DNA of 64,000 nucleotides from Ranitomeya imitator (lineage: Eukaryota): positions 574,616,001 through 574,680,000 of the forward strand of contig NC_091287.1 in assembly GCF_032444005.1 (NCBI RefSeq), in the 5' to 3' direction. Position 1 is the first letter of the stretch. The number at the start of each line of letters is the position of its first letter. Shown piece by piece: positions 1-21,500 of the stretch. The position numbers were made by a program, and so were the translations under genes. The notes beneath the pieces are model-generated. The model saw nothing but the letters and a program-made list of their open reading frames with translations, did no database searches and was not told where the DNA came from.

Positions 1-2215
1 ACCAGCACCCACGTGCCCCTTCTGGCGGGATCACACTTGGATTTACGCACGCGAAGGCGCAGAGCTTCTTTGTATATGACTAAGTCCTTGTTGATCAAAC
101 TGCCTTCCGATGTGGTTTTTCACCGTGGCGACAATTTGCTAATGCGCAGCCATAGGTAATAGCAAAGGCTGATGATGAGGATTGCCTCGTATTGTGAATT
201 GCGTACTGATGGGGATATAGAAATAATGTCATGCAATAATCTTAATGAAGCGGGTCGCTGACATTACTTGCTCAGTTGAAGCCTTTTCCAGCCTTTAATA
301 GCTTGTTTGATGAAAAAGAACTTCGTAACATCCACCCACCCCATTAGTTAAAAGGAAAAGACTATTCCGGATAATTTTCGTTGCGTTGATGTTCCCGACA
401 CGCCCCTCTTTGAGCCGAAGCAAAGATTCCGTTAACAGTTCGCATCTCGTTCGGTCTTACATATCAACGGGCCTACCATGAATTAGGGAGCACCACTCTT
501 CCCAAGCCTTACCATAGACCTGCCAGGTAGCCGGTGTAACGGACGCACGGATTACTGGCATCAATGATTGGCCACTGTGTCCCAGAGGGATGGAGGGCAC
601 TGGTCACCTGATGGTTGCACATTGGGAAGGTCTTTGAAGGCCTGCCAACGGGACGATAACTGAGTTAATGAGATTATCATCTACATCTGCCACTAATCTG
701 GCTGGGCACTAGATGTTGTTTTTCAAGCATAGTAGTACTAGCCCATGTAAGAGAGCGAGTACGGGCATCGACACAGAAGACATATGGTTTAAACGGAACC
801 TGTCACCCCCAAAATGGAAGTTGAGCTAAGTCCACCGGCATCAGGGGCTTATCTACAGCATTCTGGAATGCTGTAGATAAGCCCCCAATGTATCCTAAAA
901 GAGGTTAGATTATATTCACCCAGGGGCGGTCCGATGCCCGTCGCAGTCCAGGGCCTCCCATCTTCTTATGATGACGTCCTCTTCTTGTCTTTACGCTCCG
1001 GTGTAGGCGAATTTGGCCTGTTGAGGGCAGAGCAAAGTACTGCAGTGCACAGGCGCAGGGCTTCTCCCGTCACCTGCGCACTGCAGAACTTTGCCCTCAA
1101 CAGGCCAAATTCGCCTGCACCGGAGCGTGAAGACAAGAAGAGGACGTCATCATAAGAAGATGGGAGGCCCCAGACCGGACCGCGACGCCCATCGTACCGG
1201 GACCGCCCCTGGGTGAGTATAATATAACCCCTTTTTCTCTTCTTTCAGGATACATCGGGGGCTTATCTACAGCATTACAGAATGCATTCCAGAATGCTGT
1301 AGATAAGCCCCTGATGCTGGTGGGCTTAGCTCACCTTCGATTTTTGGGGGTGACAGGTTCCCTTTAAGTTCTTTCCGGAAGTTGGATTTTTCATTTGAAA
1401 TTGAATGTTCGCGGTTCTCAACTGTGTACCCCATAACCACCGACAATACTATTGCAAAAATTTCTAAAAGTGCAGTATCACGCCCCCAGCCTGACGTAGT
1501 CCATAGCTCTGGCCACCTGCCTATGCACTATTGGTTTTTGTAGATTGCTGCAAAACCCTCTTTGTAACGTCCTCTGACTGCGAGCCCTAGGTCCTTGCTT
1601 GACATCTCTTTTGCCATGACGTAGATATGGCCATTGTAGGAATGTTTTCCAGATTGGTAAGTCTGCCTTCAACAAGCGAGTGATCCTAATTCTATGGCCG
1701 GGCTGGGAAATGCCCTTTGTTGCCAGTGATAAACGGCAAAGAGAAGGCTCTGCCGACCGGCATTATGCGGCTGGCGAATGTCAGCAGACCCAGCAAGGTC
1801 TGCATCTGTTGGAGGGTGTCACCTTTTTAGCCTCACTGAAACCTTCCAATGTGTGTAGTGTTTTCTGTATTTTTTTCTGCTGGTAAGCGAAAAATCATTG
1901 AATTGGTGTCTATTTCAAAGCCAAGGAAAGGCATTACATTACATGGTCCAACTCTTTTTTCGGGTGATAGCGGTATGACAAAATGCCATGATATAAATTA
2001 ATTTTTTTCTAGAAGAAAGAAGCAGAGTTTTGAATTTTTGGGGCCGACGAACAAAAAATTGTCGAGGTAGTGAATCAGAGAATAGCTGCCTGTCTCATAA
2101 CGGACTACCCAGTCCAGGAAAGTACTGACTAGCTTCAAATAGTGACACGAAGTGGAACATCCCATCGGCAGGCACATATCAAAATAATAGTGCTCGTCCA
2201 CCTTGCAACCTTACA
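1..2215 (-). mobile_element. Degenerate Ngaro/DIRS-type tyrosine-recombinase retrotransposon (RT, RNase H region, YR), interrupted by a MITE
   Basis: RT FDMCLPMGCSTSC...HYLDNFLFVGP (1998-2201); then PEKRVGPCNVMPFLGFEIDT and KVTLQQMQTLLGLLTFASRIMPVGRAF...LKADLPIWKTFL (~1640-1960); YR-like FFIKQAIKGWKR...RPASLRLLHDI...YEAIL (~150-330). Contains stops and frameshifts. Confidence 0.75.
793..1363. mobile_element. TTAA-flanked MITE (T2/Kolobok-type), palindromic over its whole length
   Basis: TTAA at 789-792 and 1364-1367; termini A(C/G)GGAACCTGTCACCCCC...GGGGGTGACAGGTTCCCT; inverted symmetry continues to the centre near 1065. Confidence 0.85.
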
Positions 2216-2294
2216 AGTGGAAGAAGTCGGGGTGCATGGGTAATAGGCGTAAAGTTCAGAGAAGAGCGATCAGAATGGTGAGCTGACTGCAAAG

Positions 2295-2608
2295 TATGTC
2301 CCACGAGGAGCGGTTACAGGATCTGGGAATGTTTAGCTGCATAAATGAAGATTAAGAGGAGATCTAATAGTTGTCTACAAATATCTGAAGGGCTGTCACA
2401 GTGGAGAGGGATCACCATTCTCATTTGCACATGGAAACACAAGAAGCAATGGGATGAAATTGAGAGGGAGAAGACACAGATTAGATATTAGGTAAAAAAA
2501 AACCAAACACTTTTTGATGGTGATAAATGAGTGGAACAGACGGCCACGAGAGGCTCCGATTATCCTGGAGGTCCCTTCCAACTCTTAACATTCTAGGATT
2601 CCATGATG
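2295..2608 (+). mobile_element. CR1 LINE 3' fragment
   Basis: Degenerate LGMFS...[15 protein letters not shown]...TRSNGMKL coding; CR1-type 3' end ggtcccttccaactcttaacattctaggattccatg. Confidence 0.75.
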
Positions 2609-2849
2609 GGCTCTAGTGAGCTGGGTACCTATGAGATGCGGGTCAGTTCTTGCCTTTGAGTTCCAATGCTGGTCAGTGGATCTTTAGTCTATATGTACAG
2701 AACTTGCTCAGTGAACAGGGAAGTGTTCAATATCTAGATGGCCCCCAGCACGACTCTTGTATTGACCTTGATATTAATGCTACTTCCTCAATGTCACTTG
2801 TATACCATAAAAGACAACACGAAAATATAAAGATGCTTCTGGCCACAGC

Positions 2850-3115
2850 TGGTATGTCGCTCTCCACAAGGAGAAACCTTGGACCCCAGTCCAGAGCCTC
2901 TCACCTAGCCAAATCAGTTCTCATGCTTCGCACTGACGAGGGCCAACAGCCCGAAACACCACGTCTGCGAATTGAGATACTGATTTGGCGTTTATCCCAA
3001 GTCATATTGCACGACTCGTTAAAGGGTTGATTGTGACTTGTAGGATCGCTACTTCCAACAGGTGGTGCTATAGAGTTTAAGTCCTCTTTTTCTCTGAAGA
3101 GGCAATTTGCATATT
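2850..3115 (+). mobile_element. Probable Penelope-like element terminal-repeat fragment carrying the hammerhead
   Basis: Inferred from the minimal type I hammerhead architecture, which is known from Penelope-like element repeats. No RT or GIY-YIG coding seen nearby; limits uncertain. Confidence 0.45.
2908..2989 (+). ncRNA. Type I hammerhead ribozyme (minimal helix III, Penelope-associated type)
   Basis: Core CTGACGA 2933-2939; helix II GGGC/GCCC with loop CAACA; GAAA 2953-2956; helix III AC/GT; GTC cleavage triplet 2963-2965; helix I TTCGCA/TGCGAA, extended by TCTCA/TGAGA and GCCAAATCAGT/ACTGATTTGGC. Confidence 0.85.
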
Positions 3116-3261
3116 AAGATACTTCTGCACATCGAAATCAAGATGTCATGGTGGAGGAGATATTACGTGGCAGAAGTGCCAATCGTGGAGCCATTACAAG
3201 TTTTATTATAAAACACACTGGCTGAGCTGATCCAGACATATATACAAGAAGGACACCGTCA

Positions 3262-3267
3262 TCATAG
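3262..3267 (-). terminator. Probable BOP1 polyadenylation signal AATAAA
   Basis: TTTATT on the plus strand, ~90 nt past the stop codon. Confidence 0.7.
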
Positions 3268-3353
3268 CTGCCGACGCACTGTCTGCGGGGTGGAGGACAG
3301 GAGACTGACACTCCTTGCTTTATCTCAGGGGTCTTGTGTCAGATGAGGTCCAG

Positions 3354-3507
3354 TTATGTGAAGAGACGGATTGTAGAATCAGCCCCAGAAGAGAAGACCC
3401 AAGGCTGCGTTGGGTGGAAGACAACATCAAGGACGCCCAGATCTCGGGTAATATCATGTCCTCTGAGAACCTTCACGGGAACAATGAGCGGATTCTGCAG
3501 GAGATCG
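3354..3507 (-). CDS. BOP1: BOP1 exon 16, terminal coding part ([14 protein letters not shown]...DSTIRLFT*)
   Basis: Acceptor gttgtgcag|; TAA stop at 3356-3354. Confidence 0.96.
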
Positions 3508-6500
3508 CTGCACAACATAAGAGATGGGTCAGATCACTCCTCCTTGGACAGCAGGCAAACACCCCCTCCCCCATGACAGTCCATCGTACTTACTTGTAGA
3601 CCATGCCATGGCACACGATGACACTGCCGTCATCCGAGCCAGAGGCAAACAGCGGGTACTGTCTGTGAAAGGCCACTGCCCTTAGTGCCTTCTTATGATG
3701 TCTGTAAAACAAAACATCTCAAATAGCCACTGCTCAAACTGATCCCCCCATCACGAGAGAAGACCACCATTCACCACTTACCTGAGCACCTTGTAGGGTT
3801 TCGTGGAGAGATCCATATCAAACCAGGCCAACTTGGAATCATAACTTCCATAGATCAGATTATCACCTGGAACGACATGAGAAGTGACTGCTCTGACCTC
3901 ATCCCCCAGAGCGGCCCACCACCGCCTAGACCGCAGCAGAGGAGCCCCCCATCATTCTCCGCTTACCTGCAGGGTGGATAGCGAGGCTGGAGATCCACTT
4001 GCAGTTGGCGAGTAGCTTCTTAGTAAGCTCCTGTTTTAACAGATTGTAGACCCTGATGTAGCGCTGTGTGGCCACAAAGAAGAACGGGCGAGTGGGGTGG
4101 AACTGGACCCGCTGGACCTGGCCTTTGTTTTTGCGGAAAGGGTTTTGGCTGCGTCTGCGGCTGAGCTGATGAATAAAGACTTGAGAATTCCCATTATCTG
4201 GAAGGATCACTGCAAAATAATCCCCGCGTCCGTGCCACGTGACTTGCTTCACTGCCTGTGAGAAGAGAAGTGTGAAAAGCAGCCGAGGCCACAGCAAACA
4301 GCACCCATCATGGCAAAGTCTACCTTCTCATGGTGAAGCCGGAGCCGCAGTCCTTGGTCATAATCTGCCCCCTCTGCGGTCGCCCAGGTCACTGGCTGCG
4401 GATTCTGCTCCTCAGGGGCCTCATACCCCTCTAAATGTTGATCAGTGGAACTGCACAGAAGACGGTCTCCAAGGCCGGGGTTCACAATGACAACGGAGCT
4501 CTCCCTGAGCAAAACAATCAGCATATGTGACTGATGGCACACAACCGGAGTCGGTACATGTCAGACCAGAGCTGCATCCATCCAATAATAACAGCAGCAG
4601 AATAGTGAACGCAGCTCTGGGTTATAATACAGGATGCAACTCAGGATCAGTAATGTATGTACACAGTGACTGCATCAGCAGAATAGTGAGTGCAGCTCTG
4701 GTGTATAATACAGGAGGTAACTCAGGATCAGTAATGTAATGTATGTATACTGTGACTGCATCAGCAGAATAGTGAGTGCAGCTCTGGGGTATAATACAGG
4801 ATGTAACTCAGGATCAGTAATGTAATGTATGTACACAGTGACTGCATCAGCAGAATAGCGAGTGCAGCTCTGGTGTATAATACAGGAGGTAACTCAGGAT
4901 CAGTAATGTATGTATACTGTGACTGCATCAGCAGAATAGTGAGTGCAGCTCTGGGGTATAGTACAGGAGGTAACTCAGGATCAGTAATGTAATGTATGTA
5001 CACAGTGACTGCACCAGCAGAATAGTGAGTGCAGCTCTGGAGTATAATACAGGAGGTAACTCAGGATCAGTAATGTAATGTATGTACACAGTGACTGCAC
5101 CAGCAGAATAGTGAGTGCAGCTCTGGAGTATAATACAGGAGGTAACTCAGGATCAGTAATGTAATGTATGTACACAGTGACTGCACAAGCAGAATAGTGA
5201 GTGCAGCTCTGGGGTATAATACAGGATACTTACACACATGCAGCCACCAGCACCAGTGAGGAGTTTGGGTTCCAGCTCACACTTTTGACGGCCCCATCTA
5301 GATTAATCGTTTTCATGCAACGACCGGTACAAATTTCCCAAAACTTGAGTGTTGAGTCATCAGAGCCTAAGAAGAGCAGGAAAGTTATCCTCTCGGCTAG
5401 TGGCGTGACTTACCAGGGTTCTGTAGACCGTAGATTGTCCTTGGGGCCTCTGAGGTTCCAGTGTGCTCAGGTTAAGGCAGCTGAATTAGAGTAATCGTCC
5501 ATTAGTCTGGCACCGACTGGGCAAGACATCGTGATAATTCAGAAGACAAAAACAATCTGACGGCAAAACCTCAGTGGTGGAGCAATCGTCGTCCTCTGGG
5601 CCAGGTCTCCAAGACATGTGAATGTCAGATCTTTACATCCTTCCACAAATCAGTGTCCGCTCCACAGATGATGGCGGAGGACATAACACAGAAATAACGT
5701 CACACATCTGATTGTGAATCCACGTACCTGAGACAATCCACTGACCGGAGGGAGAGACACTGACACAGCGCACGAGGGATGTGTGACCACGATAAATCTA
5801 GTGGGACCAACAGAAAGGAGAGCGATCAGCGGAGGGGCAGACGGGACCAGGACCAGCAGGATCCGGGGAACCCCCAGAAGCTACACTCACCATGGACTGT
5901 GTGGTAGGGAATGGCTGCAGGTCTCGGGGTTTGGGTAGTTTGGGGATCAGATCCTCAGGATCCACATTGACCTGTGTGATAGAAGCACAGATGAGGGAGA
6001 CGTTCCTGGAAGTGCAGCGTGCTCATCTGGTGGTCGCTTACCCTCATCTTCCTCTGGCGAGGACACAGGTACAGGTCCAGGCAGCGCTCAAACCTCTCGT
6101 GTATGAAGCGAGCATATGCGGGGACGGAGCGCAGGGAAAGGTGGTGCTTGGGAAGGAACGGCAACTTCCGGTCTTCAGGATCCTGCTGCTCCCAGGCCAA
6201 TTTCTACAGAGGAATGAGGAGACGTTGGACATGATGGATCCTCACACACGGAGCAGGTGAATCACAGACCCATCAGACGCCGCACCTCCTCCTCGGTCAT
6301 CAGGTACTCTGGAGGGGGGTTGTAGGACTCCTCATGTCCTGGCAGTGGCAGCCGTGGAGCGGGAACGTGCATTTTGTGCCTCCCTAGTATGGCGTTCGGA
6401 TCCTCCTGAGCCCACAGGTCATAGTAACTGGGGGTGTCATCTCGAGGCTTCCGTGGACGGATCCAGCCCATCTTAATGGCATGAACCAACTTGGAAACCT

Positions 6501-9500
6501 AAAACCAGCAACAAATGTGATCACTGAGGTGGTTCCACAGCAGCAGCGGCTGCCGCCGCTATGAGGCCGATCACAGACGGCACCATCGTCAGCCGCCAAA
6601 ATGCTGTTACCTTCTCCTTCTCAATGAGGGAAGGAATGAAGCTTTTCTTGTCCGCTGGTCGGTTGGTGACGGGATGGATCATGGTCTCATGTGTGAAGAA
6701 ATCCACTGATGGCTGCAGGAAAAGATCAGAGCTCATCAGACCGGCAGGCGCCATACATTGCACCATACACCTCACATTATCACTAGAAGAGGCTCGTGTC
6801 CTCCTCGAGAACGGACGGGCTACAGGGGGCTCTAGGTGACCATGTGGTGCAACAACGGAAAAAAAATCTGCCTCATCTGTGGGGTGTCAAGTGGTATTAC
6901 TGCCCAGTTCCCTCTCAATGGAGCAGAGCAGCCACACCAAATACCACCCAGGGGCTTCTCACTACTGGGGAAGAAGAAGGCGGACGGCTCTGAGTACTGG
7001 AGAGACCACGGTGGTTGCATCAATAACTAGCCAAGGAGAAACTGCACTGACTCCTGGGGGGAGAATGGAGGGTGTGGCAGGAAGACTGCACCAACCACTG
7101 GGGAGACTGGGGGGAAATGGAGGGTGTGGCAGGAAGACTGCACCAACCACTGGGGAGACTGAGGGGGGATGGAGGGTGTGGCAGGAAGACTGCACCAACC
7201 ACTGGGGAGACTGAGGGGGGATGGAGGGTGTGGCAGGAAGACTGCACCAATCACTGGGGAAACTGAGGGGGGATGGAGGGTGTGGCAGGAAGACTGCACC
7301 AACCACTGGGGAGACTGAGGGGGGATGGAAGGTGTGGCAGGAAGACTGCACCAACCACTGGGGAGACTGAGGGGGGATGGAGGGTGTGGCAGGAAGACTG
7401 CACCAACCACTGGGGAAACTGAGGGGGGATGGAGGGTGTGGCAGGAAGACTGCACCAACCACTGGGGAGACTGAGGGGGGATGGAGGGTGTGGCAGGAAG
7501 ACTGCACCAACCACTGGGGAGACTGAGGGGGGATGGAGGGTGTGGCAGGAAGACTGAACCAACCACTGGGGAGACTGAGGGGGGATGGAGGGTGTGGCAG
7601 GAAGACTGCACCAACCACTGGGGAGACTGAGGGGGGATGGAGGGTGTGGCAGGAAGACTGCACCAACCACTGGGAAGACTGAGGGGGGATGGAGGGTGTG
7701 GCAGGAAGACTGCACCAACCACTGGGGAGACTGAGGGGGGATGGAGGGTGTGGCAGGAAGACTGAACCAACCACTGGGGAGACTGAGGGGGGATGGAGGG
7801 TGTGGCAGGAAGACTGCACCAACCACTGGGAAGACTGAGGGGGGATGGAGGGTGTGGCAGGAAGACTGCACCAACCACTGGGAAGACTGAGGGGGGATGG
7901 AGGGTGTGGCAGGAAGACTGCACCAACCACTGGGGAGACTGAGGGGGGATGGAGGGTGTGGCAGGAAGACTGCACCAACCACTGGGGAAACTGAGGGGGG
8001 ATGGAGGGTGTGGCAGGAAGACTGGACCAACCACTGGGGAGACTGAGGGGGGATGGAGGGTGTGGCAGGAAGACTGCACCAACCACTGGGGAGAAATGGA
8101 GGGTGTGGCAGGAAGACTGCACCAACCACTGGGAAGACTGAGGGGGGATGGAGGGTGTGGCAGGAAGACTGCACCAACCACTGGGAAGACTGAGGGGGGG
8201 GATGGAGGGTGTGGCAGGAAGACTGCACCAACCACTGGGGAGACTGAGGGGGGATGGAGGGTGTGGCAGGAAGCCTGCACCAACCACTGGGGAGACTGAG
8301 GGGGGATGGAGGGTGTGGCAGGAAGACTGCACCAACCACTGGGGAGACTGAGGGGGGATGGAGCGTGTGGCAGGAAGACTGCACCAACCACTGGGGAGAC
8401 TGAGGGGGGATGGAGCGTGTGGCAGGAAGACTGCACCAACCACTGGGGAGACTGAGGGGGGATGGAGCGTGTGGCAGGAAGACTGCACCAACCACTGGGG
8501 AGACTGAGGGGGGATGGAGCGTGTGGCAGGAAGACTGCACCAACCACTGGGGAGACTGAGGGGGGATGGAGCGTGTGGCAGGAAGACTGCACCAACCACT
8601 GGGGAGACTGAGGGGGGATGGAGGGTGTGGCAGGAAGACTGCACCAACCACTGGGGAGACTGAGGGGGGATGGAGGGTGTGGCAGGAAGACTGCACCAAC
8701 CACTGGGGAGACTGAGGGGGGATGGAGCGTGTGGCAGGAAGACTGCACCAACCACTGGGGAGACTGAGGGGGGATGGAGCGTGTGGCAGGAAGACTGCAC
8801 CAACCACTGGGGAGACTGAGGGGGGATGGAGCGTGTGGCAGGAAGACTGCACCAACCACTGGGGAGACTGAGGGGGGATGGAGCGTGTGGCAGGAAGACT
8901 GCACCAACCACTGGGGAGACTGAGGGGGGATGGAGCGTGTGGCAGGAAGACTGCACCAACCACTGGGGAGACTGAGGGGGGATGGAGCGTGTGGCAGGAA
9001 GACTGCACCAACCACTGGGGAGACTGAGGGGGGATGGAGGGTGTGGCAGGAAGACTGCACCAACCACTGGGGAGACTGAGGGGGGATGGAGGGTGTGGCA
9101 GGAAGACTGCACCAACCACTGGGGAGACTGAGGGGGGATGGAGCGTGTGGCAGGAAGACTGCACCAACCACTGGGGAGACTGGGGTGAGATGGTGTGGCA
9201 GGAACACTGCACCAACTACTGGGGAGACTGGGGTGAGATGGTGTGGCAGGGAGACTGCACCAACCATTGGGAAGGGGGGGGGGTTGGGCAGGAGGACTGA
9301 ACTAGTCATAGAGAAGGTTGGGGGGGGGGGGGCAGGTAGATTGCTGGAGAAATAAAAGGAGACATTTGTACCCAGTGGAGGTGACACAATTTGCAGTGAC
9401 TATTGAGTTACTAAAAGGCGGAGCACAATTTTTACATTTAAGAGGCAATTTATCTAACAAAGGCGTCCCCGGGCAGGCGAGTCTCCCCGCTGCGGTGCAG

Positions 9501-12500
9501 GATACGCTTGTTGGGTCCGGTGGAACCTTCTCACTCATTACACCATACCTCGTATGGATCACAGTTCACATCTCCAAACTGTCCTCGCTGCAGCCGGTCA
9601 ACCAGATCCACCTGCTCATCCGTCAGTTTTATGTCCCGACCGGTTTTCTTATCGTGAACAGTTCGCCTGTAAAAAAAAAATAAAATAAAACGAAACAAAA
9701 CCTCCGAAAAAACAAACCACGTAAATCAGTATGGGCAACACGGTCCCGGAGTGAGAGGGGAGGTATGCAGTCCCGGAGTTGGTGCAGAGAGGGGTATTGT
9801 GGTCCCGGAGCTGGGGGGTAATCTGCTCCTGGGGTCGGCAGGGTGGAGCTGTGGAAACACTCACCAGTAATCTGGATTCTCCATCTTGTCCAGAAACTCT
9901 TCCAGTTGGTCCTTATTCCTCAGCGGTTTGAAGATCTTTTTCCCGTCCAGGTCGTAGCCGATGTGCGGGAAATCCTTGTACCATTCCATAGGAATATTCC
10001 CAACAGTGTTTCTGATGTCCTGAGAAGGAACAGATGCCAGGTCAGGAGTGACCAACCACAATCAGACAGGTGATCTACAGTCGGTCTGACAGCCCCCCCC
10101 CGCCGGACCCCAGAAGCTGTGGCTCCAGAGGACTCATCCAAAAAAATTACCTGGAGTATAAGATGGTATGCATGCAAAAAATAGGAACATGTTAAACAGA
10201 CAAAACTGAAGATAGACAAAAAATGAACATCTCCCCTGCTGTAAGGGTGTGTGCGGCCTTTCTTGGAGATGGACATTACGTTTATATAGCTTCCCATTGT
10301 GGGCGTCCATGTTCGCGACCCAGATAGGGACAAGGTTTTAATACTAGAGATTAGGACCATCCCGAATTTGGGTCACCTTGTCGTGGTGGGAAGGCTGTCA
10401 GGCCTTCCCAAGTCGCCCATATTATTTATATATGATTGTTGTGATACTCTGGTCTAATTACAATATTAGTTACAATTTTTGCTACGAAGAATCGGTCAAA
10501 CATTATCCAGGAGTTTTCCGCCTCCCGGCCAATCGGCCACTGTCCTGGAGACTGCTGGTTCTCCAGGTTGTCTGTAGCCATCTCCAATATTGGGAGAGTT
10601 GGAGTCAAGAGGCCAAGAACTACAGGTACGGACAGACTCCTGGCACCAGCGTTATCTACTGCGCTCCCTCAGGTCCACGTCCTCAGGTCTCCAGGTATAA
10701 TGGGAACACTCAGATATCACCGGCCATCACAACTAAGGGGCAGACATCCCCAAAAAGTTATCAATAATTCCGAATCTTCATCACTTCTCCAATATAACTG
10801 AACAATCCGAAATCTGCGGCACAGGAAGAAGCTTGCGAGGGTGTAAGAAGGGTTAATACTGCGCTAGTTAGGAAGCACAGGCTAGTCTAGGCTGTTAAAT
10901 CCCACAGCCGTCTGGGGACTCCCTTCCCCCCTCTTCCAGCTTCCGATGGAGCCCCCCTCACTCGTGTCTGCTGCCGGCTGAGGGAGGAACCAGACTCACT
11001 CTCAAGGGTCACTATAAAAAGTCAATCACAGCTGCAGCTCCGCCAGACGGCTGCATCCACACGTGTGAGACCAGGACTCCATACAGGGGAAGAGATGGAC
11101 AGAAGGACAGCAGCAGAGACACAGAGGAGGCAGTGACAGCGCACCGTCCGTCCTGTGACACAGAGGAGGCAGTGACAGCGCACCATCCATCCTGTGACAC
11201 AGAGGAGGCAGTGACAGCGCACCATCCGTCCATCAGGGGACAGAGGAGGCAGTGACAGCGCACCATCCATCCGGGGAAACAGAGGAGGCAGTGACAGCGC
11301 ACCATCCATCCGGGGAAACAGAGGAGGCAGTGACAGCGCACCATCCATCCGGGGAAACAGAGGAGGCAGTGACAGCGCACCGTCCGTCCATCTGGGGACA
11401 GAGGAGACAGTGACAGCACACCATCCGTCCGGTGTCACAGAAGAGGCAGTGACAGCGCACCATCCATCCTGTGACACAGAGGAGGCACTGACAGCGCACC
11501 ATCCGTCCATCTGGGGACAGAGGAGACAGTGACAGCGCACCATCCGTCCTGTGACAGAGGAGGCAGTGACAGCGCACCATTCGTCCTGTGACACAGAGGA
11601 GGCAGTGACAGCGCACCATCCGTCCTGTGACACAGAGGAGGCAGTGACAGCGCATAGTCAATCCAGGGACACAGAGGAGGCAGTGACAGCGCACCATCCG
11701 TCCATCTGGGGACAGAGGAGGCAGTGACAGCGCACCATCCGTCCTGTAACACAGAGGCAGTGACAGCGCACCATCCGTCCATCTGGGGACAGAGGAGACA
11801 GTGACAGCGCACCATCCGTCCAATGTCACAGAGGAGGTAGTGACAGCGCACCATCCGTCCATCTGGAGACAGAGGAGACAGTGACAGCGCAACTTCCGTC
11901 CTGTGAAAGAGGAGGCAGTGACAGCGCACCATCCGTCCAGTGACACAGAGGAGACAGTGACAGCGCACAGTCAATCCAGTGACACAGAGGAGGCAGTGAC
12001 AGCGCACCGTCCGTCTGGGGACACAGAAGAGGCAGTGACAGCTCACCGTCCTACCAGTGACACAGAGCAGAGGCAGTGACAGCGCACCATCCGTCCGGTG
12101 ACACAGAGCAGGCAGTGACAGCATACCATCCGTCCATACAGAGTCACAGGTGGAGGCCAAGTCATCCTCTAGCATTGCTGCCCGCCGTTTCAATATGTCG
12201 TTTGCTATGCTCCGCCATGCCCCGCCTGCCCGCTTTCTCTACCCGGACATCAGCATGCTCTCAGACGATGAGGACAGCAGTAGTGACAGCTCCAGCTGCG
12301 GCGAAAAAGGATTCCATCACTCGGGAGGTGGAGGTAAAAGGGAACATAAAAAGTGCCCAAGACTGCATCGAGAACCACGTCAGCGACATACGGCCAACGC
12401 CCGCGAGAGGGACCGGACCAACAGCGTCAACAACGCCTTCACGGCCCTGCGCACGCTCATTCCCACCGAACCCGCAGACCGCAAACTCTCCAAAATAGAG

Positions 12501-15500
12501 ACTCTACGCCTGGCGTCCAGCTACATCTCACATCTGGGAAATGTACTACTGCTCGGAGATGCGTGCGGAGATGGACAACCCTGCCACACGAATCCCCCAT
12601 ACTACCAGCATCACCCCACCACTGCCAGTCCCAAACATCGGGAGCACGAGCATGGCCAACCAAAGCAGATCTGCACCTTCTGCCTCAGCAACCAGCGGAA
12701 ACAGGTGAGAACAAATGTCAGAAGGCCTATAATCGCCACGACCTGGGGGGCACACACACGACATGGGGGCTATAATACCTCCCTAAACCTATGCACATCC
12801 TAAGGTCCCATGATTGCGACATCCAACCCAGAAGGACAATGAGTGACAACTATATATGTACATGGTGGATAGTGAGAAGCGGACACTTCTAACCCTGTGA
12901 TGTATATAGTATATACCCTAGAGGACGGTGAGGAGGAGCGGACACTGCTAGTCCTGTCCTGTAGTGATGTATATAGTATATACCCAGGAGGATGGTGAGG
13001 AGGAGCGGACACTTCTAGTCCTGTCCTGTAGTGATGTATATAGTATATACCCAGGAGGACGGTGAGGAGGAGCGGACACTTCTAGTCCTGTCCTGTAGTG
13101 ATGGATATAGTATATACCCAGGAGGATGGTGAGGAGGAGCGGACACTTCCAGTCCTGTCCTGTAGTGATGTATATAGTATATACCCAGGAGGACGGTGAG
13201 GAGGAGCGGACACTTCTAGTCCTGTCCTGTAGTGATGTATATAGTATATACCCAGGAGGACGGTGAGGAGGAGCGGACACTTCTAGTCCTGTCCTGTAGT
13301 GATGTATATAGTATATACCCCGGAGGATGGTGAGGAGGAGCGGACACTTCTAGTCCTGTCCTGTAGTGATGTATATAGTATATACCCAGGAGGACGGTGA
13401 GGAGGAGCGGACACTTCTAGTCCTGTCCTGTAGTGATGTATATAGTATATACCCAGGAGGATGGTGAGGAGGAGCGGACACTTCTAGTCCTGTCCTGTAG
13501 TGATGTATATAGTATATACCCAGGAGGACGGTGAGGAGGAGCGGACACTTCTAGTCCTGTCCTGTAGTAATGTATATAGTATATACCCAGGAGGATGGTG
13601 AGGAGGAGCGGACACTTCTAGTCCTGTCCTGTTGAGCTGTATATAGTATATACCCAGGAGGATGGTGAGGAGGAGCGGACACTTCTAGTCCTGTCCTGTT
13701 GAGCTGTATATAGTATATACTCAGGAGGACTAGAAGTGTCTACTCCTCCACAGTCCTCCTAAGGTACAATGCCTTGAAAAAGTCTTCATACTCCATGAGC
13801 TTTTCCGCGTTTTTGTTGTTACAGCCACAAACAAATGTGTTTTATTGGGATTTTCGATGATCTGGTTTTCTAAATATTTGAACAATATAAATCTGGCAAT
13901 TGTGAGTTAGTAATCATCTCCCTGAATCGGTACTTTGTAGGACCACCTTTCTCTACTGCAGTCTTTTAGGGTCTGTCTCTCTTCCTTTCTCTGCAGTCTT
14001 TTGGGGTCTGTCTCTCCACCTTTCTCTGTAGTCTTTTGGGGTCTGTCTCCTCCTTTCTCTGCAGTCTTTTGGGGTCTGTCTCTCCTCCTTTCTCTGCAGT
14101 CTTTTGGAGTCTGTCTCTCCTCCTTTCTCTGCAGTCTTTTGGGGTCTGTCTCTCCACCTTTCTCTGCAGTCTTTTGGGGTCTGTCTCTCCTCCTTTCTCT
14201 GCAGTCTTTTGGGGTCTGTCTCTCCACCTTTCTCTGCAGTCTTTTGGGGTCTGTCTCTCCACCTTTCTCTGCAGTCTTTTGGGGTCTGTCTCTCCACCTT
14301 TCTCTGCAGTCTTTTGGGGTCTGTCTCTCCTCCTTTCTCTGCAGTCTTTTGGGGTCCGTCTCTCCCCCTTTCTCTGTAGTCTTTTGGGGTCCGTCTCTCC
14401 TCTTTTCTCTGCAGTCTTTTGGGGTCCATCTCTCCTCCTTTCTCTGCAGTCTTTTGAGGTCTGTCTCTCCCTTTTCTCTGCAGTCTTTTGGGGTCCGTCT
14501 CTCCTCCTTTCTCTGCAGTCTTTTGAGGTCTGTCTCTCCCTTTTCTCTGCAGTCTTTTGGGGTCCGTCTCTCCTCCTTTCTCTGCAGTCTTTTGGGGTCT
14601 GTCTCTCCTCCTTTCTCTGCAGTCTTTTGGGGTCTGTCTCTCCCCCTTTCTCTGCAGTCTTTTGGGGTCTGTCTCTCCTCCTTTCTCTGCAGTCTTTTGA
14701 GGTCTGTCTCTCCCTTTTCTCTGCAGTCTTTTGGGGTCTGTCTCTCCCCCTTTCTCTGCAGTCTTTTGGGGTGTCTCCAGAGCTTGGCACATCTAGGTGA
14801 CACTTTGCCTTGTTTTCTTTGCACACTCGCTCCGTGACACTGGGTGGAGACATCTGCGATTAGAGTTGAGCGCTCGGATTACGATCGGCAGCGAATATTG
14901 AATCTGCATTATTGGCCAACAAGGCCGAATGTCATTGGAGTCAATGGGAGATGAAATGACCGAATCTGTTGGGACCCGATCTTCAAACATAAAATTCTGC
15001 ACAAATCGGGAACTAATACAGCAGAATGGCAAAATCAGATTCGGCGGTCATTTCTGAACAAACTATCTGTGATCAGCAATTTTCACAGATTCTCTGAGAT
15101 TTGTGTCTGGACTATGACCGGGACCTTCACACACATGAAGATGCCCCAATATAAACCCTCCACTGTAGCTCTGGCAGGATGTTGAGGGTCATTGTCCACT
15201 GGAAGGCAAACCTACACCCCAGTCTGAAGTCTTCTGCAGCCTCTAACAGGTTTTTCTCCAGGATTGCCCTGTGTTTAGCTCCATCCATCTTCCATTCACC
15301 TATGACCAGCTTTCTGCCCCTGCTGAAGAAAAGCCTCCCCACAGCATGAGGCTGCAACCACCATGTGTGATGGTGGGGATGGTGTTTTCAGGGTGATGTG
15401 CACTGTTCTTTTTCCACCAGACAGAATAGTCTGTATTTAGCCCAACAACTTATCTATTGGTCTCATTTGACCAGAGCCCCTTCCTCCACATGCTCATTGT

Positions 15501-18500
15501 GTCCACTACATGGCTTTCTGCAAAAAGAAAACAGGACTTCTTAGGGCTTTCACAAATGACTTCTTCTTGCCACTCTTCCATAAAGGGTAGATTTATGGAG
15601 AACACGACTAATAGATGTCTTGTGGACAGATTCTCCCACCTGAGCTGTGGATCTCGGTAGCTCCTCCAGTGACGATGGGCCTCTCGGCTGCTTCTCTAAT
15701 TAATGCTCTCCTTGCTTGGGATCTCACGTTAGGTGAACACACGTCTTGATAGGTTTGCAGTTGTACCATACTCCTTCCATTTTTTGATGATGGATTGATG
15801 CTCTGTGAAATGTTCACACTTTGGGCTATTTTCGATTACCTAACCGAGCTTTCACCTTCTCCACTACACTATGCCTGACCTGTCTGGTGGGTTCCTTGGT
15901 TTCTAGGATGCTGGTTGATCCCCAATGTTCTCACAGAAATCTTCAGCGAACAGCTGTAGTTATACAGAGAAGAAATCACCTAGGTGGGCGCAATGTACTA
16001 ATTATGTGACTTCTGGGGGAGATTGGTTACTCAGGATGTTCTTTACCGGCATCAGACTACGGGGGCTGAATAATAATAATAATAATAAACCTCTCAATGT
16101 TCAGATTTATTTTGTTAAAATATTTAAAAAAAACCCTATATAATTTACGTTACACGTCACAAATGCTTGTTACTTTGTGTTGCATCACAGAAAACACATT
16201 TAAGCTTATGGATATACCATGAAAGTATCCACTCCTCCTCACCGTCCTCCTGGGTATACACTATATACATCCCTACAGGACAGGACTAGAAGTGTCCGCT
16301 CCTCCTCACCGTCCTCCTGGGTATATACTATATACATCACTACAGGACAGGACTAGAAGTGTCCGCTCCTCCTCACCATCCTCCTGGGTATATACTATAT
16401 ACATCACTACAGGACAGGACTAGAAGTGTCTGCTCCGTCTCACCATACTACAGGGTATATATTATATACATCACTACAGGACAGGACTAGTATTGTCCGC
16501 TCCTCCTCACCATCCTCCTGGGTATATACTATATACATCACTACAGGGCAGGACTAGAAGTGTCCGCTCCTCCTCACCATCCTCCTGGGTATATACTATA
16601 TATATCACTACAGGACAGGACTAGAAGTGTCCGCTCCTCCTCACCATCCTCCTGGGTATATATTATATACATCACTACAGGACAGGACTAGAAGTGTCCG
16701 CTCTTTCTCACCGTCCTCCTGGGTATATACTATATACATCACTACAGGGCAGGACTAGACGTGTCCGCTCTTTCTCACCGTCCTCCTGGGTATATACTAT
16801 ATCTATCACTACAGGACAGGACTAGAAGTGTTCGCTCCTCCTCACCGTCCTCCTGGGTATATACTATATACATCACTACAGGACAGGACTAGAAGTGTCC
16901 GCTCTTTCTCACCGTCCTCCTGGGTATATACTATATACATCACTACAGGGCAGGACTAGACGTGTCCGCTCTTTCTCACCGTCCTCCTGGGTATATACTA
17001 TATCTATCACTACAGGACAGGACTAGAAGTGTTCGCTCCTCCTCACCGTCCTCCTGGGTATATACTATATACATCACTACAGGACAGGACTAGAAGTGTC
17101 CGCTCCTCCTCACCATCCTCCTGGGTATATACTATATACATCACTACAGGACAGGATTAGAAGTGTCCGCTCCTCCTCACCGTCCTCCTGTGTATATACT
17201 ATATACATCACTACAGGACAGGACTAGAAGTGTCCGCTCCTCCTCACCGTCCTCCTGGGTATATACTATATACATCACTACAGGACAGGACTAGAAGTGT
17301 CCGCTCCTCCTCACCGTCCTCCTGGGTATATACTATATACATCACTACAGGACAGGACTAGAAGTGTCTGCTCCTCCTCACCGTCCTCCTGGGTATATAC
17401 TATATACATTACTACAGGACAGGACTAGAAGTGTCCGCTCCTCCTCACCGTCCTCCTGGGTATATACTATATACATCACTACAGGACAGGACTAGAAGTG
17501 TCCGCTCCTCCTCACCATCCTCCTGGGTATATACTATATACATCACTACAGGACAGGACTAGAAGTGTCCGCTCCTCCTCACCGTCCTCCTGGGTATATA
17601 CTATATACATTACTACAGAATAGTGCTAGAAGTGTCCGCTCCTCCTTACCATCCTCCTGGGTATATACATTACTGCAGGACAGGACTAGAAGTGTCCGCT
17701 CCTCCTCACCGTCCTCCTGGGTATATACTATATACATCACTACAGGACAGGACTAGAAGTGTCCGCTCCTCCTCACCATCCACCTGGGTATATACTATAT
17801 CCATCACTACAGGACAGGACTAGAAGTGTCCGCTCCTCCTCACCATCCTCCTGGGTATATACTATATACATCACTACAGGACAGGACTAGAAGTGTCCGC
17901 TCCTCCTCACCATCCTCCTGGGTATATACTATATACATCACTGGGGGTCACTTGGGGAATAGTGATCACAAAATAATAAGTTTTCATGTATCCTTTAATA
18001 AGATGAGTAGTATAGGGGTTACACGGACACTAAACTTCAGGAGGGCAAATTTCCAACGGATGAGAGAGGATCTTGGTGCAATTAACTGGGACGATAACCT
18101 GAGACATAAAAATACACAAAGAAAATGGGAGACAGACTAGAAGTGTCCGCTCCTCCTCACCATCTTCCTGGATATATACTAAATACATTACTACAGGACA
18201 GAACTAGAAGGGTCTGCTCCTCCTCACCGTCCTCCTGGGTATATACTATATACATCACTACAGGACAGGACTAGAAGTGTCCGCTCCTCCTCACCATCCT
18301 CCTGGGTATATACTATATACATCACTACAGGACAGGACTAGAAGTGTCCGCTCCTCCTCACCATCTTCCTGGATATATACTATATACATTACTACAGGAC
18401 AGAACTAGAAGGGTCCGCTCCTCCTCACCGTCCTCCTGGGTATATACTATATACATCACTACAGGACAGGACTAGAAGTGTCCGCTCCTCCTCACCGTCC

Positions 18501-21500
18501 TCCTGGGTATATACTATATACATTACTACAGAATAGTGCTAGAAGTGTCCGCTCCTCCTTACCATCCTCCTGGGTATATACATTACTGCAGGACAGGACT
18601 AGAAGTGTCCGCTCCTCCTCACCGTCCTCCTGGGTATATACTATATACATCACTACAGGACAGGACTAGAAGTGTCCGCTCCTCCTCACCATCCACCTGG
18701 GTATATACTATATCCATCACTACAGGACAGGACTAGAAGTGTCCGCTCCTCCTTACCATCCTCCTGGGTATATACTATATACATCACTACAGGACAGGAC
18801 TAGAAGTGTCCGCTCCTCCTCACCATCCTCCTGGGTATATACTATATACATCACTGGGGGTCACTTGGGGAATAGTGATCACAAAATAATAAGTTTTCAT
18901 GTATCCTTTAATAAGATGAGTAGTATAGGGGTTACACGGACACTAAACTTCAGGAGGGCAAATTTCCAACGGATGAGAGAGGATCTTGGTGCAATTAACT
19001 GGGACGATAACCTGAGACATAAAAATACACAAAGAAAATGGGAGACAGACTAGAAGTGTCCGCTCCTCCTCACCATCTTCCTGGATATATACTAAATACA
19101 TTACTACAGGACAGAACTAGAAGGGTCTTCTCCTCCTCACCGTCCTCCTGGGTATATACTATATACATCACTACAGGACAGGACTAGAAGTGTCCGCTCC
19201 TCCTCACCATCCTCCTGGGTATATACTATATACATCACTACAGGACAGGACTAGAAGTGTCCGCTCCTCCTCACCATCTTCCTGGATATATACTATATAC
19301 ATTACTACAGGACAGAACTAGAAGGGTCCGCTCCTCCTCACCGTCCTCCTGGGTATATACTATATACATCACTACAGCACAGGACTAGAAGTGTCCGCTC
19401 CTCCTCACCGTCCTCCTGGGTATATACATCACTACAGGACAGGACTAGAAGTATCAGCTCCTCCTCGCCGTCCAGGTTCCTCCATGTTGCAGCTCTGTCC
19501 TGAATGGTGCAAAGCTCTTGCATTGCGCCCCTCCACACTTCAGGTTCCTCCACATTGTTGCTCTGTCCTGGATGGTGTAACGCTCTTTTATTGCGCCCCT
19601 CGGTCCCCACATTCCAGGTTCCTCCACATTGTTGCTCTGTCCTGGATAGTGTAACACTTTCATTGGGCTCCTCGGTCCCCACACTCCAGGTTCCTCCATG
19701 GTGTTGCTCTGTCCTGGATGGTTTCACGCTCGATCTTGCATTGCACCCCGCAGCCCCCCATGCCATCTTGCTCGCTTCCCCACATTACTCTTCTCTCTGG
19801 AAGCAGTTACCATTTCACAGTTTCTGATAAGGAAATAATTCTTTGAAAATAATGTATTTATCCCGCATAAAACAAAGAGCACCCATCAGCGCCACCTTCA
19901 GGCCACTCCAGGGAGTGCACAGGGGGCTAGTCACTGGGGTCTTTCCAGGTTAACGCTTTCCTTCATTCTCTCTTTAGGGAAAAGATCGAGAGAGGAAGAC
20001 TACGATCAGAACCTAATGAAGGCTGTGGGGGGCATTGACCCCCAGTGACTCCCTGAAATCACACAGTGGGTGAGAGCAGTGAGCCCGGACAAAACATCCA
20101 AGAAGAACAGGGGGCAGATGCACCCCAAATCCAGGGATCAACAGATGGGACCCCCGGAAAGGAGGCTCGGCATCTCATCTTTGAAGGAGGAGCTTGTGGA
20201 AGTCAGTGGGGGTTGCACACAGGCCACCAAGCGGCCAATGCCAGCCGTGGACAAGACCAATGCTGCGCTCTACGGTTGCCACCACAGAACTCTCATCCTA
20301 CCGCCCAGACGATCCTGGAGGGTCACTGCTCAGAGGCCCGTGCTGCGGCCCATACAGGACTACAGGACTGGTGTACTGTCCATCACCTCAATAAAGAGAT
20401 GTTGTCTATTTATACTACCGATACTGTCTGTGTCACAGCAGAGGACCCCCTACATGCAGATATTGGCGGTCCGAGGACACCCCCACAGGCAAAAATGGGA
20501 GGGGAGAGGAGGCGAGACCCGAGGACCCTCTATATGCCCACTGGTAGAGATAAGAGGGAGGGTGGGGGCTAACCAGGGGATACCCCCACAGGCAAAAATG
20601 GGAGGAGGGAGAGGGCTAACCAGAGGATACCCCCACAGACAAAAATGGGAGGGGAGAGGAGGCGAGACCCGAGGACCCCCTATATGCCCACTGGTAGATA
20701 TAACAGGGAGGGTGGGGGCTAACCAGAAAATACCCCACAGGCAAAAACGGGAGGGGAGACCCGAGAACCCCCTATATGCCCACTGGTACATATAAGAGGG
20801 AGGGTGGGGGCTAACCAGAGGATACCCCCACAGGCAAAAATGGGAGGGGGGAGAGGAGGTGAGAACCGAGGACCCCTTATATGCCCACTGGTAGAGATAA
20901 TAGGGATGGTGGGGGCTAACCAGAGGATCCTACCACAGATATATGGGGGAGGGAAAGGAAGGCGGCAACATCCAAGGACCCACCTCACAGGCAGATAAGG
21001 ATGCAGCTTGGGGATCCCCTACATGCACATATAAGGGTTAAGGGGGCGGCCCGAGCATCCCCCACAGGCATACATGGGGGTGAAGAGGGCAGTCGGGGGT
21101 CCCCCAGAGGCACATATGGGGTAGTAGGGGAAGGCCCCGTGATGCTTCCCAAGTAGATAAGCGGACAGCCCGGGGATCTCCTACAGGCACATGAAGATGA
21201 AGGGGGTGGCCCAGGGGATAGGGGGCATATTTGCAACCCAAGCACCCTCCGTGCGGGAAAATAAGGGGGCAGCATGAGAATCTCCCTACAGGCATTTATG
21301 GGGTGCGTGTGACCTGAGGACCCCCTCCTATCCACAGGCACATATGGGGCTAAAGGGGGGGTGACCCGGGGATCCCCCTAGACATATGCGGGGGGAGCAA
21401 GGAGGCGCAACCCGAGGAACCAAGGATCTTTCCGGAATGTGTTATCGGGGGGGGGGGGGGGGGGGGGGAGAGTCTGGCTCGCCCACCACAGGGTAACAAA

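What the first reader, a model, noticed from the sequence alone, without database searches (positions are those of the whole stretch)
2908..2989. Intact type I hammerhead ribozyme just past the BOP1 poly(A) site
Seen: every catalytic-core nucleotide is present in order. Helix I 5' strand TTCGCA (2927-2932); CUGACGA (2933-2939); helix II GGGC-caaca-GCCC with the conserved G-C closing pair; GAAA (2953-2956); 2-bp helix III (A-U, C-G) around ACCAC; GUC with predicted cleavage between 2965 and 2966; helix I 3' strand TGCGAA. Helix I continues past an internal loop for 5 + 11 more perfect pairs, the arrangement that can dock loop II. Known: minimal-helix-III type I hammerheads are associated with Penelope-like retroelements, some cleaving as dimers, and amphibian genomes carry hammerheads. 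Inference: it reads on the + strand ~270 bp beyond the BOP1 AATAAA, so it could cut convergent or antisense transcripts approaching the BOP1 3' end. Its unbroken pairing among decayed repeats suggests recent insertion or selection.
Basis: partly seen in the sequence, partly recalled or inferred. Interest (0 to 1): 0.8.

Follow-up and report, generated by a model that had tools for sequence, protein, structure and literature searches.

The report
Hammerhead retrozyme copy beside BOP1
The self-cutting hammerhead RNA motif is real and complete, but it sits in one truncated, recently inserted copy of a small mobile repeat (a "retrozyme") that occurs thousands of times in this genome, so it is an ordinary example of a known element rather than a regulator of BOP1.

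Summary
Window 2927-2971 (+) carries every hammerhead core nucleotide, a 4-bp helix II, a 2-bp helix III, and a 6-bp helix I that extends by 5 + 11 further pairs.

The motif is not a local invention. It lies in a 274-bp non-coding insertion (2842-3115) flanked by a 12-bp target-site duplication matching at 11 of 12 positions. That insertion is a 5'-truncated monomer of a ~332-bp repeat. The repeat's 25-nt ribozyme core occurs 2,828 times exactly in this 5.96-Gb genome. Other copies form 318-332-bp tandems, head-to-head inversions and 5'-truncated units with a fixed 3' end.

This is the architecture of animal non-LTR retrozymes, which are thought to be moved by Penelope-like elements (PLEs). 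They are already described in amphibians (PMC7229834; bioRxiv 10.64898/2026.07.22.740005). Earlier follow-ups of this scan reached the same verdict on other DNA of this genome.

The window copy is slightly degraded. Two substitutions (2961, 2962) remove the near-palindromic helix III that 72% of sampled copies keep and that such ribozymes need to cleave as dimers. No second copy lies within 64 kb.

BOP1 is on the minus strand and its mRNA ends at about 3177-3183. The element lies about 60 nt beyond that end, in antisense. I found no evidence for a local role. No sampled PLE shares sequence with the repeat.

The parts
2830..2841 (.). Left target-site duplication, AAGATGCTTCTG
   Evidence: Matches 3116-3127 at 11 of 12 positions. 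Empirical p about 0.025 against random places of the same locus.
2842..3115 (+). 5'-truncated monomer of a ~332-bp non-coding hammerhead repeat (non-LTR retrozyme). It covers unit positions 202-332 and 1-151 in cleavage-to-cleavage coordinates. GC is 0.48.
   Evidence: BLAST of window 1-8000 against 29 other loci bounds the homology at 2842-3116. BLAST of a natural 332-nt unit (L020) against the window gives exactly two adjoining pieces and no other copy. Base 3116 could belong to either the element or the duplication.
2908..2989 (+). Hammerhead with its extended helix I (6 + 5 + 11 bp)
   Evidence: RNAfold gives -37.6 kcal/mol, z = -7.9.
2927..2971 (+). Type I hammerhead core domain. Predicted self-cleavage is between 2965 and 2966.
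   Evidence: RF00163 aligns over model 1-45 at 26.5 bits, E = 1e-4, below the gathering score of 34. The core was read directly from the sequence.
2961..2962 (+). Two substitutions relative to the main family form (GT to AC) that destroy the near-palindromic helix III ACAC-C-GUGU
   Evidence: Among the first 100 of 3,325 genome hits the loop reads ACCGT in 72, ACTGT in 10, ACCAT in 5, and ACCAC (this copy) in 0. The predicted energy of the double-hammerhead dimer is -77.6 for the main form and -67.0 for the window copy.
3116..3127 (.). Right target-site duplication, AAGATACTTCTG
3177..3507 (-). Last exon of BOP1 (context only). Stop TAA is at 3356-3354, AATAAA at 3207-3202, and the mRNA 3' end at about 3177-3183.
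   Evidence: ORF 3354-3518 on the minus strand carries a WD40 repeat. The exon at 3926-4297 matches human BOP1 8fkp_SS at E = 7.7e-48. RNA contigs are spliced from 3507 to 3594 and end at 3183 (X1) and 3177 (X6); in X2 the contig runs on to 3085, into the element.

Best explanation
Window 2842-3115 is a single dead-end insertion of a small non-coding retroelement, an animal non-LTR retrozyme whose unit is about 332 nt and contains one type I hammerhead.

The family life cycle is taken from the literature, not shown here. Tandem copies are transcribed. The hammerheads, acting as dimers through a near-palindromic helix III, cut the transcript into unit-length RNAs. Host ligase can circularise these RNAs. 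A reverse transcriptase supplied in trans, most likely from the abundant Penelope-like elements, copies the RNA into new sites by target-primed reverse transcription.

That process leaves a fixed 3' end, variable 5' truncation, partial tandems or head-to-head inversions, and target-site duplications of 10-17 bp.

The copy beside BOP1 is less than one unit long and has no partner copy within 64 kb. It has lost most of its dimer helix III and lies antisense to BOP1, about 60 nt past the BOP1 mRNA end. It is most likely inert at this locus. At most it would self-cleave weakly if a plus-strand transcript happened to cross it.
For: Shown here:
- The hammerhead is complete.
- The 25-nt core has 2,828 exact genomic copies against 0 for the control, and a looser pattern finds 3,325.
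- Homology ends sharply at 2842 and 3116. A 12-bp target-site duplication matching at 11 of 12 positions flanks the insert. Ten of 20 simple insertions elsewhere have 10-17-bp duplications.
- Insertion 3' ends cluster at unit positions 144-159, while 5' ends are scattered across the unit.
- Pairs of cores lie 330-332 nt apart. L020 holds about 2.6 units in tandem and L060 holds a 2.7-copy array of period 318.
- Head-to-head inverted copies occur in L008, L009, L015 and L025.
- The unit has no ORF: the longest stop-free stretch in a unit dimer is 67 aa. GC is 0.46-0.48.
- The genome holds many PLEs. There are 3,742 GIY-YIG candidates, with open frames up to 930 aa.
- Family sequence sits at k-mer depth 3,000-20,000 in RNA assemblies, against 44 for BOP1. 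One RNA contig carries a unit-junction joint from 3117 back to 2848.

From the literature:
- Metazoan type I hammerheads sit in 150-450-bp tandem non-LTR retrozymes. Amphibian ones have a weak helix III, cleave poorly as monomers and well as dimers, and co-occur with PLEs (PMC7229834).
- The mean amphibian consensus length is 316 bp, and monomer copies are spread evenly along chromosomes (10.64898/2026.07.22.740005).
Against: - No sequence link to an autonomous PLE was found. Twenty-four PLE loci (158 kb) share nothing with the unit beyond chance 11-16-nt words. None has a hammerhead by regex or Rfam.
- The hammerhead scores below Rfam's gathering threshold: 26.5 bits here and 30.6 for a main-form copy, against 34.
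- Self-cleavage, RNA circles and the strand of transcription could not be tested, because only assembled contigs were available and not raw reads.
- The copies show no compensatory changes, so the fold has no covariation support within this young family.
Confidence: 0.88

Rival explanations
1. Local regulatory ribozyme. The hammerhead cuts plus-strand transcripts that converge on or run antisense to the BOP1 3' end, and is kept for that purpose.
For: The core is intact and the motif sits about 190-240 nt beyond the BOP1 mRNA end. One RNA run has a low-depth contig (4.8 against 44 for BOP1) spanning unique DNA from 2564 into the element at 2883, strand unknown.
Against: It is one of at least 2,828 near-identical dispersed copies with a fresh target-site duplication, so its intactness is explained by youth. 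Helix III is weaker than in the family, giving a dimer energy of -67.0 against -77.6. There is no partner copy within 64 kb. Amphibian retrozyme hammerheads cleave poorly as monomers (PMC7229834). Two other RNA runs show almost no depth at 2504-2809. BOP1 read-through would carry only the inactive antisense strand.
Confidence: 0.03
2. Solo terminal repeat (pLTR) of a 5'-truncated autonomous Penelope-like element, rather than a copy of an independent non-autonomous retrozyme.
For: Most PLE insertions are 5'-truncated and retain only a terminal repeat carrying a hammerhead (10.64898/2026.07.22.740005). PLEs with long ORFs are abundant in this genome.
Against: None of the 24 sampled PLE loci, including 12 with 627-930-aa ORFs and 10-kb context, shares sequence with the unit or shows a hammerhead. 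The unit forms ORF-free tandems with periods of 318-332 bp. Flanks of 29 copies are unrelated to each other.
Confidence: 0.05
3. Same element, but mobilised by a LINE-type reverse transcriptase (for example CR1/L2-like) instead of a PLE.
For: A fixed 3' end, 5' truncation, inversions of the twin-priming kind and 10-17-bp duplications are also produced by LINE target-primed reverse transcription. No PLE partner was identified.
Against: Insertions longer than one unit and laid down as partial tandems, together with the hammerhead itself, are PLE and retrozyme hallmarks (PMC7229834). In Xenopus, retrozyme families group with PLE terminal repeats. The insertions show no poly(A) or microsatellite tail.
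Confidence: 0.07

Closest known systems
Metazoan non-LTR retrozymes (Cervera & de la Pena 2020, NAR, PMC7229834; Li, Clavereau & Pollet 2026, bioRxiv 10.64898/2026.07.22.740005)
   Same: Non-coding unit of about 330 bp with one type I hammerhead and GC below 50%. Copies occur as tandems, dimers and dispersed monomers. Target-site duplications are longer than 4 bp. Helix III is weak and suited to dimeric cleavage. PLEs are present in the same genome, and the family is abundant in RNA data.
   Different: This locus holds only a truncated monomer. Helix II (GGGC/GCCC) and loop 2 (CAACA) differ from the newt and Schistosoma type that dominates Rfam RF00163. I could not show circles or cleavage, nor homology with any PLE terminal repeat.
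Newt and salamander satellite 2 hammerhead, and axolotl HHR_Amex1 / HHR_Amex2
   Same: Amphibian type I hammerhead in a repeat of about 330 nt. Helix III has 1-2 bp capped by a (near-)palindromic loop, and the ribozyme is efficient only as a dimer (Forster et al. 1988, as cited in PMC7229834).
   Different: Here the family's helix III region is ACAC-C-GUGU, giving 4 + 4 bp around a C-C mismatch in the dimer. Copy number is in the thousands rather than about 10^5. Copies are mostly dispersed short insertions rather than long satellite arrays.
Minimal hammerheads in Penelope-like element terminal repeats (Cervera & de la Pena 2014, cited in PMC7229834)
   Same: Type I topology, a very short helix III, tandem or inverted insertion architecture, and retroelement context.
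   Different: The hammerhead here is canonical, with a 4-bp helix II and a long helix I with an internal loop that could contact loop 2. It is not the stripped-down PLE variant, and no RT/GIY-YIG ORF adjoins it.

Membership tests
Hammerhead ribozyme, type I (Rfam RF00163) | Conserved catalytic core in order: CUGANGA, GAAA, and a cleavage triplet ending in UH | tested here: met
   CUGACGA is at 2933-2939, GAAA at 2953-2956 and GUC at 2963-2965.
Hammerhead ribozyme, type I (Rfam RF00163) | Three helices around the core, with helix I open (type I topology) | tested here: met
   Helix I has 6 bp (plus 5 + 11), helix II 4 bp and helix III 2 bp. Nearest-neighbour folding prefers an alternative GACG/CGUC pairing by about 5 kcal/mol.
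Hammerhead ribozyme, type I (Rfam RF00163) | Score at or above Rfam's gathering threshold (34 bits) | tested here: not met
   The window copy scores 26.5 bits and a main-form family copy 30.6 bits. The shortfall comes from the helix II and loop 2 sequence and from helix III, not from the core.
Hammerhead ribozyme, type I (Rfam RF00163) | Self-cleavage in Mg2+ at the predicted site | not testable with these tools
   Only assembled contigs were available, and these cannot show RNA ends.
Animal non-LTR retrozyme | Short non-coding unit (150-450 bp) carrying a type I hammerhead and found in tandem copies | tested here: met
   Met at family level. The unit is 332 bp and cores lie 330-332 nt apart. 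Tandems occur in L002, L018, L020, L027 and L060. The longest open stretch is 67 aa. The window locus itself is a sub-unit monomer.
Animal non-LTR retrozyme | No LTR, PBS or PPT; GC below 50%; target-site duplications longer than 4 bp when present | tested here: met
   GC is 0.46-0.48. The window copy has a 12-bp duplication and 10 of 20 other insertions have 10-17 bp. Flanks of different copies are unrelated. PBS and PPT were not searched for explicitly.
Animal non-LTR retrozyme | Expressed as unit-length linear and circular RNA | tested here: inconclusive
   Family k-mers are very deep in RNA assemblies, and one RNA contig joins the unit end to the unit start (3117 to 2848 with about 64 nt between). 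A tandem genomic copy would give the same joint.
Animal non-LTR retrozyme | Co-occurrence with autonomous Penelope-like elements | tested here: met
   PF01541 (GIY-YIG) gives 3,742 candidates, 148 of 150 scored pass the threshold, and open frames reach 930 aa.
Penelope-like element (terminal repeat of an autonomous copy) | The unit flanks, or is homologous to the ends of, an RT + GIY-YIG ORF | tested here: not met
   No such ORF lies next to the window copy or in 35 family loci. There is no similarity to 24 PLE loci. The sample is small against thousands of PLEs, so the negative result is weak.

The most novel reading that the evidence does not exclude
The insertion may have been drawn into BOP1 3'-end biology. 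In one study the spliced BOP1 contig runs past the usual poly(A) site into the antisense retrozyme. A plus-strand transcript crossing the copy could be cut at 2965/2966, so the element might shape convergent transcription or alternative 3' ends at this locus.
Probability: 0.03. Interest if true: 0.45.

Novelty: new member of a known kind. Interest (0 to 1): 0.1.

Why it matters
It matters little on its own. The copy is a clean, well-bounded example of a hammerhead retrozyme insertion, with a target-site duplication, a fixed 3' end and 5' truncation. It confirms that this large frog-type genome carries a young family of several thousand copies.

Two practical points follow for the scan.
- Rfam's gathering threshold and speed filters miss this whole family: it scores 26-31 bits against 34, and a 601-nt search found nothing. 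Hammerhead counts in such genomes from default Rfam scans are therefore underestimates.
- An "intact ribozyme next to a gene" in this genome should be presumed to be a repeat copy until its copy number has been checked.

Tried and rejected
- **Chance motif: rejected.** The core has 2,828 exact genomic copies against 0 for the reversed control.
- **Rfam at gathering threshold: no hit** on the window or on 12 PLE loci. A permissive scan of 7 PLE loci gave only spurious miRNA-like hairpins. A 601-nt permissive scan of L006 missed its two hammerheads. A 201-nt scan found one at 30.6 bits.
- **Link to PLEs by sequence: none found.**
  - BLAST of the unit against 12 top GIY-YIG loci and 12 long-ORF PLE loci found nothing.
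  - A short-word BLAST of unit pieces gave only chance 11-16-nt matches.
  - Strict and relaxed hammerhead regex scans of the PLE loci found nothing.
- **Pairs of cores about 7 kb apart as possible terminal repeats of a PLE (L055, L056):** these turned out to be segmental duplications without ORFs.
- **Covariation: not informative.** The 53 collected copies differ by single, pair-breaking, mostly CpG-type changes.
- **Mapping cleavage ends or RNA circles from public runs: not possible.** All runs are served as contigs.

Full report
**1. Is the motif there?**

Yes. The sequence at 2927-2971 (+) reads as follows.
- Helix I 5' strand: UUCGCA
- Core: CUGACGA
- Helix II: GGGC, loop CAACA, GCCC
- Core: GAAA
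- Helix III and loop: C-ACCAC-G
- Cleavage site: UC, cut after C2965
- Helix I 3' strand: UGCGAA

Every coordinate in the finding is correct. Rfam's type I hammerhead model (RF00163) aligns over its whole length at 26.5 bits, E = 1e-4 in a 201-nt search. This is below the gathering score of 34, so the whole-window scan at that threshold was empty.

The 82-nt hairpin at 2908-2989 folds at -37.6 kcal/mol (z = -7.9). A generic hammerhead pattern finds no other credible motif in the window.

**2. What does it belong to?**

A search of the window's own 5.96-Gb genome with 2880-3010 returned over 1,000 candidates. The 40 scored were 96-98% identical. The 25-nt core CTGANGAGGGCCAACAGCCCGAAAC occurs 2,828 times exactly, against 0 for the reversed control. 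A looser pattern across helix III finds 3,325.

BLAST of window 1-8000 against 29 other loci bounds the shared sequence at 2842-3116. Flanks of different copies are unrelated.

Alignment shows that the full unit is about 332 bp. The window lacks about 50 nt of it, the stretch that in other loci joins the end of one unit to the start of the next.

In cleavage-to-cleavage coordinates the window copy covers unit positions 202-332 and then 1-151. That is 274 bp, less than one unit.

Across 30 loci:
- insertion 3' ends cluster at unit positions 144-159, with a minor class near 226-258;
- 5' ends fall anywhere in the unit;
- many insertions exceed one unit as partial tandems (L002, L018, L020, L027);
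- others are head-to-head inversions (L008, L009, L015, L025).

L060 holds a 2.7-copy array of period 318. Several core pairs on contig C1 lie 330-332 nt apart.

The window copy is flanked by AAGATGCTTCTG (2830-2841) and AAGATACTTCTG (3116-3127), a 12-bp target-site duplication with one mismatch. Ten of 20 simple insertions elsewhere have 10-17-bp duplications.

The unit has no ORF (longest open stretch in a unit dimer 67 aa) and GC of 0.46-0.48. A natural unit RNA folds so that helix I closes the molecule (-94.5 kcal/mol, z = -3.4).

A fixed 3' end, variable 5' truncation, tandem or inverted layout and variable target-site duplications are the marks of target-primed reverse transcription of a multimeric or circular template.

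**3. State of this particular ribozyme**

In an unselected listing of 100 genomic hits the helix III region reads as follows.

| Loop variant | Count |
|---|---|
| ACCGU | 72 |
| ACUGU | 10 |
| ACCAU | 5 |
| ACCAC (window form) | 0 |

The main form, ACAC-C-GUGU, is nearly palindromic. It gives at best 3 bp plus a triloop in a monomer. In a domain-swapped double hammerhead it gives 4 + 4 bp around a C-C mismatch.

The window copy differs at two positions:
- 2961, G to A, a CpG-type change shared with a subgroup;
- 2962, U to C, absent from the other 53 copies I collected and from the 100 listed genome hits.

This leaves 2 bp in either form.

| Fold | Predicted energy (kcal/mol) |
|---|---|
| Double hammerhead, main form | -77.6 |
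| Double hammerhead, ACCAU form | -70.3 |
| Double hammerhead, window copy | -67.0 |
| Two separate monomer hammerhead folds | -65.2 |

Rfam scores agree: 30.6 bits for a main-form copy and 26.5 for the window copy, whose alignment flags four of the model's helix III pairs as non-standard.

So the core is intact, but the feature that such ribozymes rely on for efficient cleavage is largely lost. No second copy exists within 64 kb to pair with.

Among the 53 collected copies about ten have broken cores or a broken helix II. The differences are single, uncompensated, mostly CpG-type changes. The family is young and decaying neutrally, and there is no covariation to count.

**4. The BOP1 context**

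BOP1 is on the minus strand.
- The exon at 3926-4297 matches human BOP1 (8fkp_SS, residues 532-639) at E = 7.7e-48.
- The last coding exon ends with TAA at 3356-3354.
- The only AATAAA between the stop codon and the element is at 3207-3202.

Three runs behave as RNA: their contigs skip 3508-3593, with GT..AG ends on the minus strand. Their BOP1 contigs end at 3183 (X1), 3177 (X6) and 3085 (X2).

The element's 3' end (3115) therefore lies about 60 nt beyond the usual mRNA end, in the opposite orientation. BOP1 read-through, which X2 suggests, would carry only the inactive antisense strand.

Unique DNA to the left of the element (2564-2841) is covered at depth 4.8 in X1, against 44 for BOP1, with strand unknown. 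It has no depth in X2 and only a trace at 2555-2605 in X6. Contigs cannot show RNA ends, strand or level, so cleavage at 2965/2966 could not be tested.

Family sequence is very deep in these RNA assemblies (3,000-20,000). One RNA contig joins 3117 back to 2848 with about 64 nt between, which is one unit junction. This could come from a tandem transcript or from a circle.

**5. The Penelope link**

The genome is rich in PLEs. There are 3,742 GIY-YIG candidates, 148 of 150 scored pass the threshold, and open frames reach 930 aa.

I examined 24 PLE loci (158 kb), 12 of them with 627-930-aa ORFs in 10-kb context.
- None shares sequence with the unit beyond chance short words.
- None shows a hammerhead by regex or Rfam.
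- Two pairs of cores about 7 kb apart proved to be ORF-free segmental duplications.

The link therefore rests on architecture, co-occurrence and the literature.

**6. Comparison with what is known**

Cervera & de la Pena (2020, PMC7229834) showed the following.
- The classical type I hammerheads of animals sit in non-coding tandem repeats of about 150-450 bp, which they named non-LTR retrozymes.
- These repeats have low GC and target-site duplications longer than 4 bp.
- Amphibian versions have a weak helix III and cleave well only as dimers.
- PLEs are the likely mobilisers.

Li, Clavereau & Pollet (2026 preprint) reported:
- such elements in all seven amphibians they sampled, with a mean consensus length of 316 bp;
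- monomer copies spread evenly along chromosomes;
- exon-overlapping copies falling mostly in last exons and 3' UTRs;
- Xenopus families that group with PLE terminal repeats.

The present element meets every defining feature that I could test at family level. At this locus it is a truncated monomer.

Notes from earlier follow-ups of this scan describe several other retrozyme insertions, including units of 314-316 nt, elsewhere in the same genome, with the same verdict. I treated these as leads only, and my own tests agree with them.

The family's 31-mers are present in sequencing runs labelled with at least eight organism codes. The repeat is therefore shared among related species.

**7. Verdict**

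It is unsupported on selection and on a local function.

This is an ordinary, slightly degraded, dead-end copy of a known class of mobile element, so interest is low. The residual novel reading, co-option at the BOP1 3' end, has a probability of about 3%.

Noticed in passing
L002-L030 (family loci); unit positions in cleavage-to-cleavage coordinates: Insertion 3' ends of this family cluster at unit positions 144-159 (...GCAATTTGCATATT), not at the hammerhead cleavage site (position 332/1). A minor class ends near 226-258. If the template is a self-cleaved linear RNA, its 3' end is not where reverse transcription starts. This fits internal priming on a circular or multimeric RNA.
   Followed up: partly
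window 3085-3183 (-): In one RNA study (run X2) the spliced BOP1 contig continues about 95 nt past the poly(A) site used in two other runs (ends at 3183 and 3177). It enters the antisense retrozyme copy. This could be read-through or an alternative 3' end.
   Followed up: no
window 1998-2201 (-): A 67-aa ORF carries a reverse-transcriptase-like YLDNFLFVG motif but has no Pfam hit at E <= 0.01. It is probably a fragment of another retroelement upstream of the hammerhead copy. RNA contig depth is high at 2300-2452, which points to another expressed repeat there.
   Followed up: no
L043, L044, L052, L054 (PLE loci elsewhere in the genome): Penelope-like elements with 750-930-aa open frames sit in inverted or tandem partial duplicates that are 98.6-100% identical. 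This implies very recent PLE activity. None of them showed a canonical hammerhead.
   Followed up: partly
L006 1450-2050: Rfam's permissive scan of 601 nt missed two complete hammerheads that a 201-nt scan detects at 30.6 bits. The speed filters, not only the gathering threshold, hide this family.
   Followed up: yes
L045 9489-9571 (-): A long perfect hairpin scores 48.7 bits against mir-605 (gathering score 98). It is most likely an inverted repeat of a transposon, not a miRNA.
   Followed up: no
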